A stretch of DNA of 64,000 bases. Source: Mytilus edulis (lineage: Eukaryota). The position numbers and the translations under genes are program-made. The DNA is taken from positions 50,592,001-50,656,000 of the forward strand of contig NC_092353.1 in NCBI RefSeq assembly GCF_963676685.1, written 5' to 3'. Position 1 is the first letter of the stretch; every line of letters starts with the position of its first letter. The notes beneath the pieces are model-generated. The model was given only the letters and a program-made list of their open reading frames with translations. It had not been told where the DNA came from and did not search any database. Positions 1-9,307 of this stretch are shown one piece after another.

Positions 1-1040
1 GAAATCCCATACCGCATAGTCAGCTATAAACAGTTCGAAATGCCAATTATAAAACAATTCAAACGAGAAAAGTAAATGATTTATGTACAAAATAAATGAA
101 GGAAAAACAAATATGCAACACAGCATAAAACGACAACCACTGGGTAACAGGCCAATAAACTTCCTGTGTCAAAACAATCAACACAGAAAATTCAACACCA
201 TTATATATTCAAAGATGTCCTGTTTTTTAACTTGTGGACAAAAGATGTATACAGAAGAAGATATAAAAGCCTTAAGGAAGTGATTACAAGAACCTTTACT
301 TATACATTGACCTACATCCGAATCAATTTAGACATTTTAATAAATACTTTTTATAGATATATAAAAATCAGGGTTTCCCAGTGTCATGTAAACATAAATA
401 CATACAAAAACTTCCTGTTTACATGGAGGTTGGAGAGCCATTAATTTAATGAGATGCTGCTTAAAAGGTTATCGTCATAGGGTAAGCATGAAAATCACAG
501 AACAACTTTTTTTTCAATTTAAGATTGTGTAGTCTTGATACATAATAAAACACAGTCTGAAAGCTGTTAATATTCGATCGGAGCTTAGAAGTTCGAAACG
601 GTTCACAATAAATATAACTTCGAAAGGAAAATCTAGATTCGTACAGGTTTAAGCCACAATTTCACACAAAACTTAGATAAACTACAATCCTACTTAACTT
701 TTGTAACTCTTATATTAACGTTCAAAATTGCATCTTGTAAATAACCGTATAATGTATGTGAACAAAATGTTTGTTTGTTTGTGTTTAAGCGTTATGTCAT
801 ATATATATTTACGGACTTTATAATTTGAGGAAGCCAGAGTACCTGATGGTAAAAAGGGGCGGCAAATTGCCAATGCTTTTCATTCAAGATAGAACTTCCA
901 ACCATAGAGTTGACAGTTTAGTAAACCACCAAGACTAGTCAGTATATCGCTAAGGGTCGAAGAACAATTGCGCTTTGCTTATACATGTACATTAATTTAA
1001 AAGATATGTTCCCATTTCCTTTTAGATTAAATGACATTAA

Positions 1041-4000
1041 ATGGTAATGGACGTAAGCGGTAACTTTACCATTTATTTGTCTGACGGTGGAGATGAAGAC
1101 GAAAGAAATAAATCGAAACGAATCATCGAACGCTTGGAAGATTCTAATATTGGAATTATATACGGAGACAGAGATTTTATACCCGGATGTATGATACTAG
1201 ACAACAAAAGAAATGCGGTTCTAAAGTCAGACTTAGTGGTGGTACTTTTGTCCGATAGCTTTATAGACTCGACTGAATGTGTTTATGATGTTGCTTTGGC
1301 AATTTGTCTAGAAAGACACATTATTATAATAGACAACAGAAAACTAAGAAGAATGCCACCATTATTAAATGAATTGCCAAAGATAAAAGGACGTACAAAC
1401 TTTGTCAAAGTGTTACAAAAGCTGAAACGAATGGTTGATGGGTATTATGCAGAAGGTAAGTTCTGTTTTAGACTTGTACCTTCTCTTTTAAAAAGGCTGT
1501 TTCAATTCCGAAAGGTTTTTAGATTTTTGTCTTTTCATAGTTTTGTGTATGCTTTTTATTGATTTTTCATCAATATATGCGACGATGTTGCTTGGAATGG
1601 ATTTGGATTACTTTTGTTTATGTCTATGTCTTGTTAAAAAACGCTTTTATTTTTGAATGGGTATATAGAATACACCTTATCGCTATTTATCGTAATTAAG
1701 ACAACTTCCTGTTTGGTTCAAACATTGCAACAACAAACGTCAACTGTTTCAAGTTAAGGAAAGAAATTGTATAGAAAGCAAACAATATATATATATATTA
1801 AAATCATAACAGTTTTTTGAAGCTTTTTATGATTGTTTAAAAATATTTTTTTATAAATAAAAAGGTCTATGCGTAATACATTGTTTAAACTGGGCCCCAG
1901 ATAGATGTCAAATGGGTGTAAAAGTTGTGTAATTTCAGATCTTATTCGGATTGGAGTAAAAAGCGATATGGTGTATTAGTTTAAATTCTTCGTATATTTT
2001 ATTCCGGCATGAAATATTTGCCACTGAACGTTAAGTACTATAGTAACCAACAATCAATCGTGTATTTTGTTCAAAATTTTAACAGAAAAAAAACAATCAA
2101 GGAATAGGAAAGACGATGCACAGGTATATATCAGGGAAGTGGAACGAACAGCTACTTTAGAAAATGAACAAGAATTTCAAAACCAGATTCTCAGACTCCA
2201 GGCTCAACTGACGCAAACTCAAAGAGACAAGAAAATAGCTAAACACATTGCGATTGTAGATGGAGATAGAGCATTTAACAACTATCACCATGAACAAACA
2301 ATACGATACCAGTTGGAGAAAAGAATCAGAGAAATGGAGAACCATATACAGACACTCAGCAGAGAAAACGTTATGCTGAAGCAGCCAGTGGTAAGTTCCC
2401 AACACAGGTCACAGAAATAAATTCTTAAATTTCATGATAAACCATTATATTAAGAATTGCATGCTTCTTTTTGTAAATTTATTGGGGTGTCAAAACGTTG
2501 ACCGAAGTACTAAAAATGTACGCACGGTCAACGCTTTTACAACCCTATAAAGTTACAAAAAGAAGCATTCAATACTTATAATTACATTTTTTAGCTATGA
2601 TCGTGAAAACACGAATTTTATTATTTAATTCACCTGTGCACTTTATTGTTGGAGCACGTGTTATCATGAGTGAAAAGTTGTATTGAGCAATGCAACTGCT
2701 TACGGAATAACACGTGATGTGCAGTTAGCCAATCAGAATAAAATATTATAATGAAACATACATCTAATGTAATTTTTGAGGTATATAGGAAAACATTTCT
2801 GAGACGAAGTCTTCTCGTTTGTATTTTGTTATGTTATGTCATAGCTTTGTTTGCTTTACTTCAATTGCATATACAAAAAGAAGGCACACGTTTAATGTAT
2901 TGGTGTGTTTTACTTCTAGGTTTCTGTCAGTCCAATGGTTGAGAGAAATTCACAGCAAACTCCATTTCAAGAAATTCAAAAACAGATAAATCAGGTTTTG
3001 ATTGAAATATCAAATCTGAGTCATAAGAATGTAGACAACGTGGATACGAATACTACATTCTACAGAATGCCGACTGAATTGAAATGTTTTTGTCAAAAAT
3101 ATGAGGAAATGATTGGTATGTATACAAATTTATAAACCGTTTAAGGCCTGAGGGACGCCGATTTGATTTTTTGAGCGTGAGCCTCAGAGGGGAGAGGCAG
3201 GATGATTTTGTAAATGAATGTTTGGCCTGGTAAGAACTGAAATAGATGAATAATCAATTGGAAGATAAAAAATGCCTAGTAACTTTAGTTTAGAGGTTTT
3301 ATTTGAGATGTCGTAGTGATGATGTTAAGGACAAGGAACAATATATGGGCTATGTTGCAGATTTTGAAAAAAATTGCACACATCCTTTGCTCATTGAACT
3401 GCCTGAAAATCGAAAGAAAAAGTTGCATTAATCTAGTTTACTTTCTGAACATGACTGAGTACTCTCAGATCTGTTCATTGTGGCTTTTTGTGTCGGGATG
3501 TATAAGTACCCGGCCACGTCCACTTATATTTTTGTCCATCTGATGAGTAAAGCCCTTTTTAACTGATTTTTATAGTTCGTTCTTATGTTGTACTGTTATG
3601 CCACTGTCCCAGGTTAGGGAGAGGGTTGGGATCCCGCTAACATGTTTAACCCCGCCACATTATTTATGTATGTGCCTGTCCCAAGTCAGGAGCCTGTATA
3701 TTCAGTGGTTGTCGTTTGTTTATGTGTTACATATTTGTTTTTCGTTCATTTATTTACATAAATAAGGCCGTTGGTTTTCTCGTTTGAATTGTTTTACATT
3801 GTCTTATCGGGGCCTTTTATAGCTAACTATGCGGTATGGGCTTTGCTCATTGTTGAAGGCCGTACGGTGACCTATAGTTGTTAATGTCTGTGTCATTTTG
3901 GTCTTTTGTGGATAGTTGTCTCATTGGCAATCATACCACATCTTCTTTTTTATATGATTGAAATCTTTCAAAATAGGTGAACATTTGTAAAGAAATCACA

Positions 4001-5609
4001 TAAAATCTTCGAAAAGAGTTCTTTAATTTGTATTTAAATCATCAAATACATGTATCCAATTTCAAATCCATTGTTGTTTTTTTTTTTGTTTTTTTTTTTT
4101 TTTTTAAGCTGTAATAAATGATCTAAATAAACTTTGTCACCCAGGTCCAAATATTTGTCGACTGGGACGATTACTGCATTTATCAAATCACCAGATAGAA
4201 AAGGTAGAAGAATGCAGGGAGAATGGTTATGTTGAAATGTTTTGGCAGACGATAAAGTTTTGGCAGTCAAATGAAAACTCAGACGAAAGCTTTGTGACGT
4301 TACTGAATGTATTAGAAGACATTGGTGTTGATATCGGAGGTAACTTTAATACTTATATGAATTATTGAGGCTGCACAAGAACGCAAAAAAGACTGCAACT
4401 ACCTTTGCAGAAAAAGTCCAACAACAGTTACAGACAATATAGTTTATAGTGCTTATATAAAATCAATCACTGATAAAAGAAAACTAAAAGAAATAAAGTA
4501 AATTCTACAAAGTTAGTGATGAGTATGACAATTTCAAACACGTTTGATGATACAATTTAAAAGCTTAACAACTTTTTCAGAAATTAAATAATATACACGA
4601 CTGTTTGATATCTATTTAGGAAAGCCAATGTCAAAGACTGAAGTGAGAATACTCCATGAGAAGATTCCTTTCATCTTGAACAATATTTACCAAGTAAATG
4701 ATTTGATACCATACCTGATATCTCAGCACGTGTTAACACACGTGACTGAGATGTTTATCAGAGAACCAAGGAATAAGGAGGAAAGACTATTGCGTTTAAT
4801 CAATGTTCTCACAACAAAACACTATGGAATTAAGGCCCTTTGTAATGCCCTTACCCATACAAACCAGGAATTTATAGCAGACGAGATATCACGTGAGTAT
4901 ATATTGACACATGACAAAGTAGGCAAATGTAGGTCTGCTTTTACTACCTCAGTTATACTTCGGAGTAAGCTGGTCCCCCGTTCCAATTAAACTCCGCACC
5001 GAAGCGTAGCAATAAGTGAATACAACATGGGACCAGTATGCTTATGTGCTCTTACATTTAGGGATGGATCTAGGATTTTTTATAAGGGGGCGTAATTCCA
5101 TTAAATCGGGACGAAGAAAAAAAACGACAAGCGTAGCGAGTTTAAATTTGTTTTGAAGATTTTATGCTGAAAAACATTACGACCTCTTCCCCCTTTGAAT
5201 CATCTCTTAAACTGAGAATGTTTTCGATAAGATAATTTATAAGCTATAACCGTGAAGAAATATTGATAACATTAATAATAATATTGCATGTGAGCTTAAA
5301 AGATCTTAAAGTTATCATTTTATTGTAGGTTCTATGCCAAATATACCGACAAGCCGTTTCCCTGTTGAATTAACTGATGAAAGCTGCGATTCTCAATGGA
5401 GTTCAGATGAATCTAGACTACAAGTAGCACGTGTTGCACCAATTACCGCTACAGTAAATTCAGTAAAAGCATATGCGCACCTTGAAGAAAAACATCAGTG
5501 TCAGAATGAAGACTTAAATAACACATGTGTCGATGGAATTGAGCAATTAATTAAAAAGGTCTCTAAGGAAAAAACTATAAAATCCCGTAGGGGTTGTAGT
5601 ATTCAATAG
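1041..5609 (+). CDS. TIR - coiled-coil - Death domain - CARD protein with C-terminal CaaX box; 6 coding exons: 1041-1455, 2086-2390, 2920-3115, 4109-4339, 4620-4892, 5329-5609 (1701 nt, 566 aa)
   Basis: All five introns are GT..AG with matching phases (1,0,1,1,1), and the joined length is a multiple of 3. Exon 1 is a TIR (FTIYLS, GDRDFIPG BB loop, VVVLLSDSFIDSTECVYD). Exon 2 is a Q/E/K-rich coiled coil. Exon 4 translates to AVINDLNKLCHPGPNICRLGRLLHLSNHQIEKVEECRENGYVEMFWQTIKFWQSNENSDESFVTLLNVLEDIG (Death-domain pattern). Exon 5 is CARD-like (LIPYLISQHVLT..ERLLRLINVLTTKHYGIKALCNAL..NQEFIADEI). The protein ends KSRRGCSIQ*. Confidence 0.88.
3476..3955 (+). repeat. Abundant dispersed repeat; relatives at 1-140(-), 17222-17365, 37755-37935, 57223-57500, 58555-58660(-), 60050-60310(-)
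   Basis: Shared GTGCCTGTCCCAAGTCAGGAGCC and GAAGGCCGTACGGTGACCTATA blocks. A sister family lies at about 9530-9800 and 21990-22270. Confidence 0.75.
4109..4339 (+). CDS. Death-domain exon (exon 4 of the TIR gene), absent from the supplied ORF track
   Basis: Poly-T tract followed by AG at 4107-4108, 77 open codons, GGAG|GTAACT donor. Motifs RLGRLL-L---QIE-VE and W---E----SF-TLL-VLEDIG are typical of Death domains. Confidence 0.85.
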
Positions 5610-7119
5610 TACAAGTACCAACCACAAATATTGTACATAGTAGTCAGAGAGCTCATTGAGGTCTTGCATTTTAAAGGACAAATTTCAAACAGTTGAGAAA
5701 CTGTTTAGCCTGCCAAAGCCAAAGATAACACAAAAAAAGTGAGAAAAAAAACTTTAGAAAACTTTTATGTTTTTCTTTTGCATACATATGGAATAAGTTG
5801 ACTTAAGGAGTGAAAGATTGCAAATTAATACAGTTAAATGATAAATACTTTTATATGAGTAGTCTTGAAAACATGAAGCATTTGTTGTAAATGATATGTT
5901 TTTGTATAAATTATTATGTGCTGTAATTGTGATATTTACTTGACTTTTTGAGGGTTACCGTGAATTAAGATAAAGTTATTGTATACAAAAATACAGGTTT
6001 TTTTATATATTTATTGCAAGTATGAGTGTTTATGAATATTTTGGGATGCGGGATATATATAAAAAGTTGGATGTCGGTTATTAGAGTAAATAGAAACAGG
6101 GATCTGGGAAAGAAAGGGAGAACGTGTGTAGTATACTGTTGTTTTTACTTTTTAACTGTTCTCTTTCATTTGCGTTGTAAGTTTAATTTATTTTTGACTT
6201 GAGTCACTGCCTAGCTGCCTTGTCTGGCAAAACAGTTGTTAGACGTCAGAACAAACGCGGACTACTTCGACTTGTGAGTTTGAAAGCCCGTTTGTCTTCT
6301 TTCTGCTCCCCATGTAAGTTAGTCTACAGCGAAGAACTATTTTCGCCGGGTTGCTTATATTTATAAACATTTTTTTTTCTGAAGAAAAATGTCACAATCA
6401 CTATTTGTTTACTGACTATTTCAAGAAGTGTAATTTTTCACTGGCGTCTTATAGGTATTCAACAATTGACCCCAAATCTTAAAAAAATAACCTTGAAGAA
6501 GTGACAGTTGTGGGTACGATCGTAAACTTCATACACTAGTCTATGGATTTATGATTATTGCCCAATTTCACATAAGAAAATTACACTTTAAAAGAAATCA
6601 TTGATCACTAAAACTGATATTACACCCTTGACTCGATTTCACTTCCCTTTTTAAAAAAAGTTCAAGTATTAAAAGTGAATGGAGTGTAAGTAAATATAGA
6701 ATAACTGTCCTACTGTTTAAATTTTTATGATGTTGTATAATTTATAAAGTTGGTATACATACTTTGATTTATATTAACGCTTCGTGTGGGTGTCATAGAA
6801 CAAATATTGGTCTCTCCTGTTCGTTAATATAATAATAAAAATGCACAAGGAAACTTGAAACGTATACTCCACGTCTATCGATACACACTAAATAATATTT
6901 GGTCCGTTTTAAATCATATTCCCAACTTATGGATCTTCCCTGAAATATTTGCCAATGGACGTCAAGCAACAAACAATCAGTCAATAATATTATATTTCTT
7001 ATCCATATCGCGGCGTGTCATAACAAATTATGTTTTATTATATTGGTTTGTCTGTCATATGCTCCACGAAAACATTAAATGAAAGTTTCTATATTTAATG
7101 CCAGCAATGAAAACCCCTC

Positions 7120-7967: not shown

Positions 7968-8011
7968 GCGTCACTGATGAGTCTTTTGTAAACGAAACGC
8001 GCGTCTGGCGC
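7968..8011 (+). ncRNA. Minimal type I hammerhead ribozyme (Penelope/retrozyme type)
   Basis: Stem I GCGUCA(7968-73)/UGGCGC(8006-11); core CUGAUGA 7974-80; stem II 7981-93 with one C-A mismatch; GAAA 7994-97; palindromic mini stem III CGCGCG; GUC cleavage triplet 8003-05. Confidence 0.8.
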
Positions 8012-8818: not shown

Positions 8819-9307
8819 TTATTCATAGTATAACATGTAGCAAGTTGCCACGATCACACTATCCTCGAATGGTACAGTCACAGATGTATGTGTATCTGTA
8901 GAATCATTCCATAGACATCTACTTCCAACAGAAATTGTAGCGTTTTCTTGAACAATAGTTACGTGTACAATTATTCTAAAACGACTGTTAAAATACTCCG
9001 CTTTGATTCGTTGTCTGATAGCATCACTCAGTCGCGTGCAGAGAAAACCACGCCCCTCTTTATCCAAGAAATCTTCCTCCTCTCCGGAAACCACCTCCAG
9101 TATTGTATTGTTCATGATACTGTTGACAATTTTGGTTGCGATAGTGTCATCTGGTGCTATCCTATATGTATTCTCATAACGAATTTTAGGTTCTTCGCTC
9201 GTTTCAGTTCGGCTGCTGTCATCTTCTCGCTTAAAGATGTGAGGAGACTTGATAACGTTTCTCACTAAATTAGAAAATCTACTAAGTCTTGGGAGACGCG
9301 TTTCCAT
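8819..9307 (-). CDS. Tctex-1 domain dynein light chain (TCTEX1D/DYNLT5-like), copy 1, intronless CDS, 162 aa
   Basis: YENTYRIAP motif, RFRIIVHVTIVQ, GSRCLWNDSTDTH, C-terminal ATCYMLYYE. Confidence 0.9.
   Translation of the reverse strand: METRLPRLSRFSNLVRNVIKSPHIFKREDDSSRTETSEEPKIRYENTYRIAPDDTIATKIVNSIMNNTILEVVSGEEEDFLDKEGRGFLCTRLSDAIRQRIKAEYFNSRFRIIVHVTIVQENATISVGSRCLWNDSTDTHTSVTVPFEDSVIVATCYMLYYE

What the first reader, a model, noticed from the sequence alone, without database searches (positions are those of the whole stretch)
5553..5609. K-Ras-like polybasic + CaaX tail (KKVSKEKTIKSRRG-CSIQ*) on the TIR-DD-CARD protein
Seen: the protein ends in C-S-I-Q after 7 basic residues. Established: CaaX with X=Q favours farnesylation, and polybasic plus prenyl targets the plasma membrane. 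Known TIR sorting adaptors use PIP2 binding (TIRAP) or myristoylation (TRAM). Inference: this is a prenyl-anchored TIR/death-fold adaptor, an unusual way to pre-position a signalling platform at the membrane.
Basis: partly seen in the sequence, partly recalled or inferred. Interest (0 to 1): 0.8.

Follow-up and report, generated by a model that had tools for sequence, protein, structure and literature searches.

The report
Predicted farnesyl anchor on mussel TIR adaptor
A mussel-specific immune-type adaptor protein (TIR, death domain, CARD-like domain) really does end in a positively charged stretch followed by a lipid-attachment signal (CSIQ), kept in all five Mytilus species on record, so it is probably tethered to membranes by a farnesyl lipid, though nobody has tested this.

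Summary
Window 5553-5609 (+) encodes KKVSKEKTIKSRRG-CSIQ-stop, the end of a six-exon Mytilus edulis gene (1041-5609). Its exon translations match RefSeq XP_071135203.1 (554 aa) exactly. Spliced contigs from three runs show every intron, including the last junction (4892>5329), and two contigs run through the stop codon.

The domains are TIR, coiled coil, Death and a sub-threshold CARD-like domain. Then comes an acidic 72-residue linker with no domain match, and then the tail.

GCSIQ is unchanged in all 13 complete C-termini. These cover M. edulis (two near-identical gene copies), galloprovincialis, trossulus, coruscus and californianus, and the CARD-skipping isoform. Seven of the 15 columns before GCSIQ vary, yet K+R stays at 7-8.

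Published FTase rules favour I at a2 and Q at X. The genome encodes prenyltransferase beta subunits and ICMT.

Limits:
- Conservation is only genus-deep and not statistically decisive (p about 0.17).
- No full-length orthologue outside Mytilus is on record.
- The structure model was poor.
- "K-Ras-like" overstates the charge: the usual allele has D, not V, so net charge is +5.
- There is no biochemical evidence.

Verdict: a credible, untested farnesyl plus polybasic anchor, and a new variant of a known targeting device. The scan had also noted the same tail on the second gene copy.

The parts
1041..1455 (+). Coding exon 1 (the exon starts at 1025; ATG at 1041): TIR domain, residues 1-138
   Evidence: Pfam TIR 2e-7, 31.4 bits against cut-off 21.3. 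Best solved relatives are the TLR15/2/6/1 and MyD88 TIR domains. Junction 1455>2086 seen in spliced contigs.
2086..2390 (+). Exon 2: helical, coiled-coil-like region, residues 139-240
   Evidence: Only weak coiled-coil-type Pfam hits. Long helices in the low-confidence model. Junctions seen.
2920..3115 (+). Exon 3: linker and start of the death domain, residues 241-306
   Evidence: Junction 2390>2920 and loose ends joining 3115 to 4145. On the whole protein the Pfam Death match begins at residue 303.
4145..4339 (+). Exon 4: Death domain core, residues 306-371
   Evidence: Pfam Death 3.7e-5, 24.2 bits against cut-off 22.6 on the exon alone; 28.5 bits on the whole protein. Junction 4339>4620.
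4620..4892 (+). Exon 5: CARD-like death-fold domain, residues 371-462. It is skipped in isoform X2.
   Evidence: Pfam CARD 6.5e-4, 20.1 bits, below the 23.9 cut-off. No match by sequence among solved structures. Isoform X2 proteins P0076 and P0086 lack exactly this exon.
5329..5552 (+). Exon 6, first part: acidic linker with no domain match (net charge -7), residues 462-536. It contains the conserved PVELTD at 5361-5378.
   Evidence: No Pfam family. Charge. Coil in the low-confidence model. PVELTD is kept in all species.
5553..5594 (+). Polybasic stretch KK(V/D)SKEKTIKSRRG, residues 537-550
   Evidence: Seven K/R here. K+R is 7-8 in the 16 residues before CSIQ in every species, although 7 of 15 columns vary. 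It ties for the most positive 16-mer of the protein.
5595..5606 (+). CaaX box C551-S-I-Q554, the predicted farnesylation site
   Evidence: Invariant in 13 complete C-termini from 5 Mytilus species. Fits FTase rules.
5607..5609 (+). Stop codon TAG
   Evidence: Transcript contigs pass through it unspliced.
5610..5950 (+). 3' UTR. Depth in two runs falls by about 5950. One contig continues past 6700, to about 7990 by its length.
   Evidence: Depth table and contig records 8, 13 and 19. The end points are approximate.

Best explanation
The tail is a working bipartite membrane anchor. After translation, cytosolic farnesyltransferase attaches a C15 farnesyl to Cys551 of the CSIQ box. Because a2 is Ile, the SIQ tripeptide is probably then removed and the Cys carboxyl-methylated. 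The farnesyl, together with the neighbouring cluster of 7 Lys/Arg (net +5/+6), holds the C-terminus on the acidic inner leaflet of the plasma membrane and/or endocytic membranes. A flexible acidic linker of about 70 residues lets the TIR, Death and CARD-like domains reach receptor tails. The protein would thus be a membrane-resident adaptor that joins the 'sorting' function (like TIRAP, TRAM and dMyD88) and the 'signalling' function (death-fold oligomerisation) in one chain. Shown here: the gene model, the stop codon, the motif, its conservation within Mytilus, its fit to published FTase specificity, and the presence of prenyltransferase beta-type and ICMT genes. Inferred: the modification itself, aaX processing, which membrane is targeted, and the role in TLR-type signalling.
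For: The motif and stop are confirmed in DNA and in spliced transcripts of three runs. The exon translations match RefSeq XP_071135203.1. GCSIQ is invariant in M. edulis (two copies), galloprovincialis, trossulus, coruscus and californianus, and in the CARD-less isoform, although the tail exon is the most divergent part of the protein (77% edulis-californianus identity; 7 of the 15 columns just before GCSIQ vary). K+R stays at 7-8, with one loss (K>N) offset by one gain (I>R) in M. californianus. Q at X and I at a2 are the positive FTase patterns in the all-CXXX yeast screen and a1 is tolerant (PMC10320760). X=Q sequences such as CAHQ are farnesylated and are not GGTase-I substrates (PMC11152559). 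There is no transmembrane segment (max KD19 1.45) and no other obvious targeting device. The tail follows a linker with no domain match. The genome has three prenyltransferase-beta loci and an ICMT locus. The TIR is of the TLR/MyD88 signalling type. Known TLR sorting adaptors use an equivalent lipid anchor plus polybasic logic, as in TRAM's myristoyl plus polybasic motif (PMC6901815). Joint chance of such a tail is about 3e-6 per protein.
Against: There is no biochemical or localisation evidence. Conservation is only genus-deep: with 71% of tail-exon columns invariant, five invariant end columns have p of about 0.17. The two M. edulis copies are 98-99.5% identical in DNA and add no independent evidence. 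No full-length orthologue outside Mytilus is on record, so deep conservation could not be tested. The basic cluster is interrupted by acidic residues and is weaker than in K-Ras4B. Yeast FTase accepts most CXXX sequences, so a good motif fit is not very discriminating. The AlphaFold model was poor (mean pLDDT 35), so accessibility of the tail is not shown. An Rce1-like gene was not detected by the exon-wise search (uninformative). The one raw-read RNA run laid showed no reads on the exons.
Confidence: 0.6

Rival explanations
1. Fortuitous C-terminus. The CXXX end and the basic residues are a lineage-specific accident in a young, fast-evolving tail. The protein is cytosolic and is recruited only through TIR and death-fold contacts. 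Any farnesylation is absent or has no functional effect.
For: The family is restricted to Mytilus plus two exon-sized fragments of unknown origin. The tail exon is the least conserved part. Invariance of five residues within one genus is not significant (p about 0.17). About 0.2 such tails are expected by chance per proteome, so one case is not impossible in a genome-wide scan.
Against: The joint probability per protein is about 3e-6. The basic count is maintained despite turnover of neighbouring residues. The tail is kept in both isoforms and both copies. An accessible CSIQ would be expected to be farnesylated given FTase's breadth.
Confidence: 0.25
2. The protein is farnesylated, but the lipid does not serve plasma-membrane pre-positioning. 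The basic stretch would act as a nuclear or endomembrane signal (lamin-like nuclear-envelope targeting), or the farnesyl would mediate a protein-protein contact, as in Spindly.
For: KK..K.K..K.RR could also pass as a nuclear localisation signal (inference). Farnesyl-dependent protein-protein interaction has a precedent in Spindly (PMC4384735, title and abstract). From general knowledge of charge-dependent targeting, an intermediate net charge of +5 tends to give mixed plasma-membrane and endomembrane localisation.
Against: The basic residues abut the CaaX box directly, as in the classical bipartite membrane signals. A TLR/MyD88-type TIR is expected to work at receptor-bearing membranes.
Confidence: 0.1
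3. Cys551 has another use, such as S-palmitoylation alone or a redox or disulfide role, rather than prenylation.
For: M. coruscus carries a second Cys four residues upstream (KCRKGCSIQ), a layout reminiscent of palmitoylation sites. The tail exon holds several other conserved Cys (C481, C528).
Against: The Cys sits exactly at -4 with favourable a2 and X residues. Palmitoylation of C-terminal cysteines in such contexts normally follows prenylation (general knowledge).
Confidence: 0.05

Closest known systems
K-Ras4B-type C-terminal signal (polybasic region plus farnesylated CaaX)
   Same: A Cys at -4 with an FTase-type box, directly preceded by a Lys/Arg-rich stretch. No upstream palmitoylatable Cys in four of the five species.
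   Different: It is carried by a TIR/death-fold adaptor, not a GTPase. The basic residues are scattered and interrupted by D/E (net +5/+6) rather than forming a contiguous lysine run. X is Q rather than M. It is untested.
TRAM (TICAM-2) bipartite localisation motif
   Same: A TIR adaptor without a transmembrane segment whose membrane residence comes from a lipid anchor next to a short polybasic region (PMC6901815).
   Different: TRAM's anchor is an N-terminal myristate. Here it is a predicted C-terminal farnesyl. There is no sequence relationship beyond the TIR fold, and TRAM has no death-fold domains.
TIRAP/Mal and Drosophila MyD88 (phosphoinositide-binding sorting adaptors)
   Same: TIR adaptors that are pre-positioned on membranes through electrostatic lipid binding. 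dMyD88 combines DD and TIR with a lipid-binding region in one chain.
   Different: They have no covalent lipid. The domain order differs: MyD88 is DD then TIR, whereas this protein is TIR, coiled coil, DD, CARD-like. No orthology was found.
Prenylated innate-immune proteins (ZAP-L, GBP1)
   Same: Immune proteins whose function or localisation depends on a C-terminal CaaX farnesylation (PMC8568172 and PMC2903825, titles and abstracts).
   Different: Those are an RNA-binding restriction factor and a dynamin-like GTPase, not TIR or death-fold signalling adaptors.

Membership tests
CaaX-type farnesyltransferase substrates | Cys exactly four residues from the translated C-terminus | tested here: met
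   (stop confirmed in transcripts); 13 of 13 complete homologues.
CaaX-type farnesyltransferase substrates | a2 and X residues permissive for FTase (a2 not D/E/K/R; X not K/P/R), with X favouring FTase over GGTase-I | tested here: met
   CSIQ has a2 = I and X = Q, both positive patterns in PMC10320760. X=Q sequences are not modified by GGTase-I (PMC11152559). CSIQ itself was not found in the held supplements.
CaaX-type farnesyltransferase substrates | Flexible, solvent-exposed C-terminal segment | tested here: inconclusive
   No Pfam domain in the last exon and coil in the model, but the model is poor (mean pLDDT 35).
CaaX-type farnesyltransferase substrates | Modifying enzymes present in the organism | tested here: met
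   Prenyltransferase beta family at three loci and ICMT at one locus. The Rce1-like search was blank, which is uninformative for a short intron-split domain.
CaaX-type farnesyltransferase substrates | Thioether-linked farnesyl on the Cys | not testable with these tools
   Needs metabolic labelling, a gel shift or mass spectrometry.
Polybasic plus prenyl (K-Ras4B-type) plasma-membrane signal | Cluster of Lys/Arg immediately upstream of the CaaX box with high net positive charge | tested here: met
   7-8 K/R in the 16 preceding residues in every species; net +6 for the window allele and +5 for the common allele. This is weaker and less contiguous than in K-Ras4B.
Polybasic plus prenyl (K-Ras4B-type) plasma-membrane signal | Charge-dependent and prenyl-dependent plasma-membrane localisation | not testable with these tools
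   Needs imaging of tail fusions with C>S and K/R>Q mutants.
TLR sorting adaptors (TIRAP, TRAM, dMyD88) | Signalling-type TIR domain | tested here: met
   Pfam TIR is above its cut-off. The nearest solved TIRs are TLR15/2/6/1 and MyD88.
TLR sorting adaptors (TIRAP, TRAM, dMyD88) | Orthology or close sequence relationship to TIRAP, TRAM or MyD88 | tested here: not met
   A search of 1.84 billion representatives with the TIR exon found only Mytilus proteins and two fragments below E 1e-10. This protein may work like a sorting adaptor but is not a member of those families.
TLR sorting adaptors (TIRAP, TRAM, dMyD88) | Binds activated receptor TIRs and nucleates a signalling complex at the membrane | not testable with these tools
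   Functional assay needed.
CARD-containing proteins | Match to the CARD profile above the curated threshold | tested here: not met
   17.7-20.1 bits against a cut-off of 23.9, and no match among solved structures by sequence. The region is helical with 6-7 helices in a low-confidence model, so it is called 'CARD-like' only.

The most novel reading that the evidence does not exclude
A farnesyl-anchored, single-chain TIR, coiled-coil, Death, CARD-like protein is a permanently membrane-resident seed for a TLR-type signalling complex in mussels. It would merge the sorting-adaptor and signalling-adaptor roles that vertebrates and flies split or achieve by phosphoinositide binding. Alternative splicing (CARD exon skipped, anchor kept) would switch its output, and Ser/Thr residues inside the basic stretch would allow a phospho-electrostatic release switch.
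Probability: 0.3. Interest if true: 0.7.

Novelty: new variant of a known kind. Interest (0 to 1): 0.42.

Why it matters
Where TIR adaptors sit in the cell decides which receptors they serve. The known solutions are phosphoinositide binding (TIRAP, dMyD88) and N-myristoylation plus a basic patch (TRAM). A C-terminal farnesyl plus basic patch on a TIR/death-fold protein would be a third, independently evolved solution. It would also be an example of how the greatly expanded bivalve TIR repertoire is wired to membranes. The idea is cheap to test with tail-GFP fusions, a C>S mutant, farnesyltransferase inhibitors or a yeast Ydj1-CaaX reporter. The tail could also serve as a compact membrane-targeting tag for mollusc cells. 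The gene is confined to one genus as far as the databases show, and nothing is known of its function, so the wider impact is moderate.

Tried and rejected
- A word search with the tail exon alone found only one 91-aa fragment cluster, because of the tool's length window.
It showed that no full-length relative exists outside Mytilus, so deep conservation of the Cys could not be tested.
I therefore could not fetch the contigs of fragments P0003 and P0004 or the coding DNA of the other species, and no dN/dS analysis of the tail was possible.
- The second M. edulis copy is 98-99.5% identical in DNA including its introns, so I rejected it as independent evidence.
- AlphaFold2 on the 14-sequence alignment gave mean pLDDT 35. 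I therefore ran no fold search and make no claim about disorder from it.
- No paper in the library holds both 'CSIQ' and 'farnesyl', and the held supplements of the all-CXXX screen do not contain CSIQ. The motif was judged by the paper's position rules instead.
- The Rce1-like Pfam search of the genome was blank. This is uninformative for a 93-position domain split by introns.
- The raw-read RNA run X21 had no reads on the exons, so there is no information on transcript ends or expression level.
- A PDB sequence search with the CARD-like exon was blank.
- Weak CARD paralogues on contig C8 (24-33% identity) were glanced at and dropped as uninformative for the tail.
Whole-protein work used natural database proteins only.

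Full report
**The observation**

Window 5553-5609 on the + strand reads AAA AAG GTC TCT AAG GAA AAA ACT ATA AAA TCC CGT AGG GGT TGT AGT ATT CAA TAG. This translates to KKVSKEKTIKSRRG-CSIQ-stop. The 14 residues before the Cys hold seven Lys/Arg and one Glu.

**Gene model and transcripts**

The tail belongs to a six-exon gene on the + strand. The coding parts are 1041-1455, 2086-2390, 2920-3115, 4145-4339, 4620-4892 and 5329-5609.

I laid Logan contigs of three runs on window 800-6700. The runs are labelled 'RNA?' and come from three coded organisms. They show the GT..AG joints 1455>2086, 2390>2920, 4339>4620 and 4892>5329. Loose ends join 3115 to 4145.

The joined forms show that these contigs derive from spliced RNA. 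The last junction has depth 209/149/228. One contig (record 13) spans exon 5 through the stop to 5678. Another (record 8, 2665 nt) starts at 5329 and runs unspliced past 6700. TAG 5607-5609 is therefore the real stop in the real last exon.

A minor contig retains the last intron (4865-5358) at roughly a tenth of the depth or less. It most likely comes from unspliced precursor RNA. The raw-read RNA run X21 showed no reads on the exons.

Instead, the exon-by-exon TIR search led to natural database proteins. The six exon translations lie at positions 1, 140, 241, 307, 372 and 463 of RefSeq XP_071135203.1 (P0069, 554 aa, Mytilus edulis). Its contig length of 84,842,022 equals that of the window's contig. 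The genome is therefore M. edulis.

**What the protein is**

| Exon | Residues | Assignment | Evidence |
|---|---|---|---|
| 1 | 1-138 | TIR domain | Pfam 31.4 bits against cut-off 21.3; nearest solved relatives are TLR15/2/6/1 and MyD88 TIRs, so it is a signalling-type animal TIR |
| 2 | 139-240 | Helical, coiled-coil-like | |
| 3-4 | 241-371 | Death domain | 24.2 bits on exon 4 alone and 28.5 bits on the whole protein, against cut-off 22.6 |
| 5 | 371-462 | CARD-like only | 17.7-20.1 bits against cut-off 23.9; no match among solved structures by sequence |
| 6 | 462-554 | Acidic linker, then the basic stretch and CSIQ | No family match; linker net charge -7 |

There is no transmembrane-grade hydrophobic segment (maximum KD19 of 1.45). 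There is also no Gly2 for myristoylation. The tail is therefore the only visible membrane-targeting device.

**Relatives**

A HMMER search of 1.84 billion representatives with the TIR exon gave one full-length protein (M. trossulus, 95%). It also gave two exon-sized fragments (P0003 and P0004, 51-52% identity, origin unknown). The next hit was at E = 1e-7.

A word search with the natural M. trossulus protein found only Mytilus proteins: edulis, californianus, galloprovincialis and a Logan mRNA cluster that also holds M. coruscus.

In the M. edulis genome the TIR, Death, CARD-like and tail exons each hit only this gene and one second copy. That copy lies 377 kb upstream and is inverted. It is 98-99.5% identical in DNA including its introns. 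It is therefore a very recent duplicate or an uncollapsed haplotype, not independent evidence.

The family is genus-restricted as far as the databases show. P0003 and P0004 could come from other mytilid genera or from dispensable genes of other Mytilus individuals.

**Conservation of the tail**

All 13 complete C-termini end in GCSIQ. They comprise:
- the two M. edulis RefSeq copies, two older M. edulis models and the M. edulis isoform X2;
- M. galloprovincialis isoforms X1 and X2;
- M. trossulus;
- M. coruscus plus three mRNA-derived Logan proteins;
- M. californianus.

The last exon is the most divergent part of the protein. Edulis-californianus identity is 77% there, against 91-96% for TIR, Death and CARD-like. 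Seven of the 15 columns just before GCSIQ vary.

Even so, K+R in the 16 residues before CSIQ is 7 in every species and 8 in copy 2, which has an extra Arg. M. californianus loses one Lys (K>N) and gains one Arg (I>R).

This fits constraint on charge and on the CaaX box, but it is not statistically decisive. With 71% of tail-exon columns invariant, five invariant end columns have p of about 0.17.

Isoform X2 skips exactly the CARD-like exon and keeps the tail. The anchor is thus the constant part and the CARD-like domain the optional part.

The window's Val539 (5560 T) is unusual. The three RNA assemblies, copy 2 and all other species have Asp. The common tail therefore has net charge +5.

**Fit to enzyme specificity**

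In the all-CXXX screen of yeast FTase, a1 is tolerant. The main exclusions are D/E/K/R at a2 and K/P/R at X. Q at X (Ydj1 reporter) and I at a2 (Ras reporter, which also needs cleavage and methylation) are the positive patterns (PMC10320760).

Human FTase modifies X=Q sequences such as CAHQ, while GGTase-I does not modify sequences outside CaaL/I/M (PMC11152559).

CSIQ therefore predicts farnesylation rather than geranylgeranylation, probably followed by aaX cleavage and methylation. CSIQ itself was not found in any paper or held supplement.

The genome has three prenyltransferase-beta loci and one ICMT locus. The Rce1-like search was blank, which proves nothing for a short domain split by introns.

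Because FTase is broad, motif fit alone is weak evidence. The stronger argument is the combination with the adjacent basic cluster. The joint chance is about 3e-6 per protein, or about 0.2 expected per 65,000-gene proteome (rough estimate).

**Mechanism proposed**

Farnesyl on Cys551 together with the basic patch would tether the C-terminus to acidic inner-leaflet membranes, at the plasma membrane and/or endocytic compartments. The acidic linker of about 70 residues would let the TIR and death-fold modules reach receptors.

This mirrors TRAM's myristate plus polybasic motif at the opposite end of the chain. It does by covalent lipid what TIRAP and Drosophila MyD88 do by phosphoinositide binding (PMC6901815).

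I put this at about 0.6. The rivals are:
- a fortuitous, unused tail (0.25);
- farnesylation serving another location or a protein contact (0.1);
- another use of the Cys (0.05).

**Comparison and novelty**

The device itself, CaaX plus a polybasic stretch, is classical. Text searches of the paper library found nothing that links prenylation with TIR sorting adaptors, within the limits of word matching.

The protein is not an orthologue of TIRAP, TRAM or MyD88. Its domain order differs from MyD88's.

I rate it a new variant of a known kind. It is a credible and cheap-to-test prediction in a lineage-restricted, uncharacterised gene.

Other first-stage notes in this genome flag CaaX tails on other immune-type proteins. 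I did not test those and use them only as leads.

**Limits**

- The AlphaFold2 model was poor (mean pLDDT 35). No fold search was run and no disorder claim rests on it.
- Read laying and the look-up of sequencing runs were each used once, without refusals.

Noticed in passing
G000:C10:50214882-50219426 (- strand); L012, L002: A second copy of the whole gene lies 377 kb upstream and is inverted. It is 98-99.5% identical in DNA including introns and flanks. Its tail has one extra Arg (KSRRRGCSIQ) and it is RefSeq XP_071135180.1 (555 aa). It is either a very recent segmental duplication or an uncollapsed haplotype.
   Followed up: partly
window 4620-4892 (exon 5): RefSeq isoform X2 in M. edulis (P0076, 463 aa) and in M. 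galloprovincialis (P0086, 462 aa) skips exactly the CARD-like exon. The phase is preserved and the CaaX tail is kept. I did not see this joint among the 15 listed joints (180 more were not shown).
   Followed up: partly
window 5361-5378 (residues 473-478): PVELTD (PVEVTD in M. californianus) fits the TRAF6-binding consensus P-x-E-x-x-(acidic/aromatic). It is the only such match in the protein and is kept in all species. About 0.3 matches are expected by chance per protein, so this is only a lead.
   Followed up: partly
P0083, P0070, P0084, P0085 (M. coruscus and related mRNA contigs), C-terminus: The M. coruscus tail reads KCRKGCSIQ. The extra Cys four residues upstream of the CaaX Cys could be a palmitoylation site of the H-Ras or N-Ras type.
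   Followed up: no
window 5560: The reference has T (Val539). Contigs of all three runs laid, the second copy and all other species have A (Asp). The window therefore carries a rare or derived allele that raises the tail's net charge by one.
   Followed up: yes
window 2376-2770 and 3361-3960 (introns 2 and 3): These are interspersed repeats with very high summed contig depth in the RNA-like runs (up to about 430,000), many internal joints and many loose ends. They look like abundant SINE- or MITE-like mussel elements, possibly transcribed elsewhere in the genome.
   Followed up: no
window 4865-5358: Low-depth contigs retain the last intron (3-20 against 150-230 for the spliced form). If translated, they would end the protein at a stop at 4988-4990 without the tail. 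They most likely come from precursor RNA.
   Followed up: partly
window 8819-9307 (- strand): A single-exon 162-aa ORF holds a Tctex-1 family domain (dynein light chain type; Pfam 1.5e-14), about 3 kb downstream of the gene and convergent with it.
   Followed up: partly
window 7985-8010: The long 3' contig of run X1 ends, by its length, about where a sequence begins that I recall as a common bivalve repeat (from memory, not tested). The contig's end is thus probably an assembly break, not a poly(A) site.
   Followed up: no
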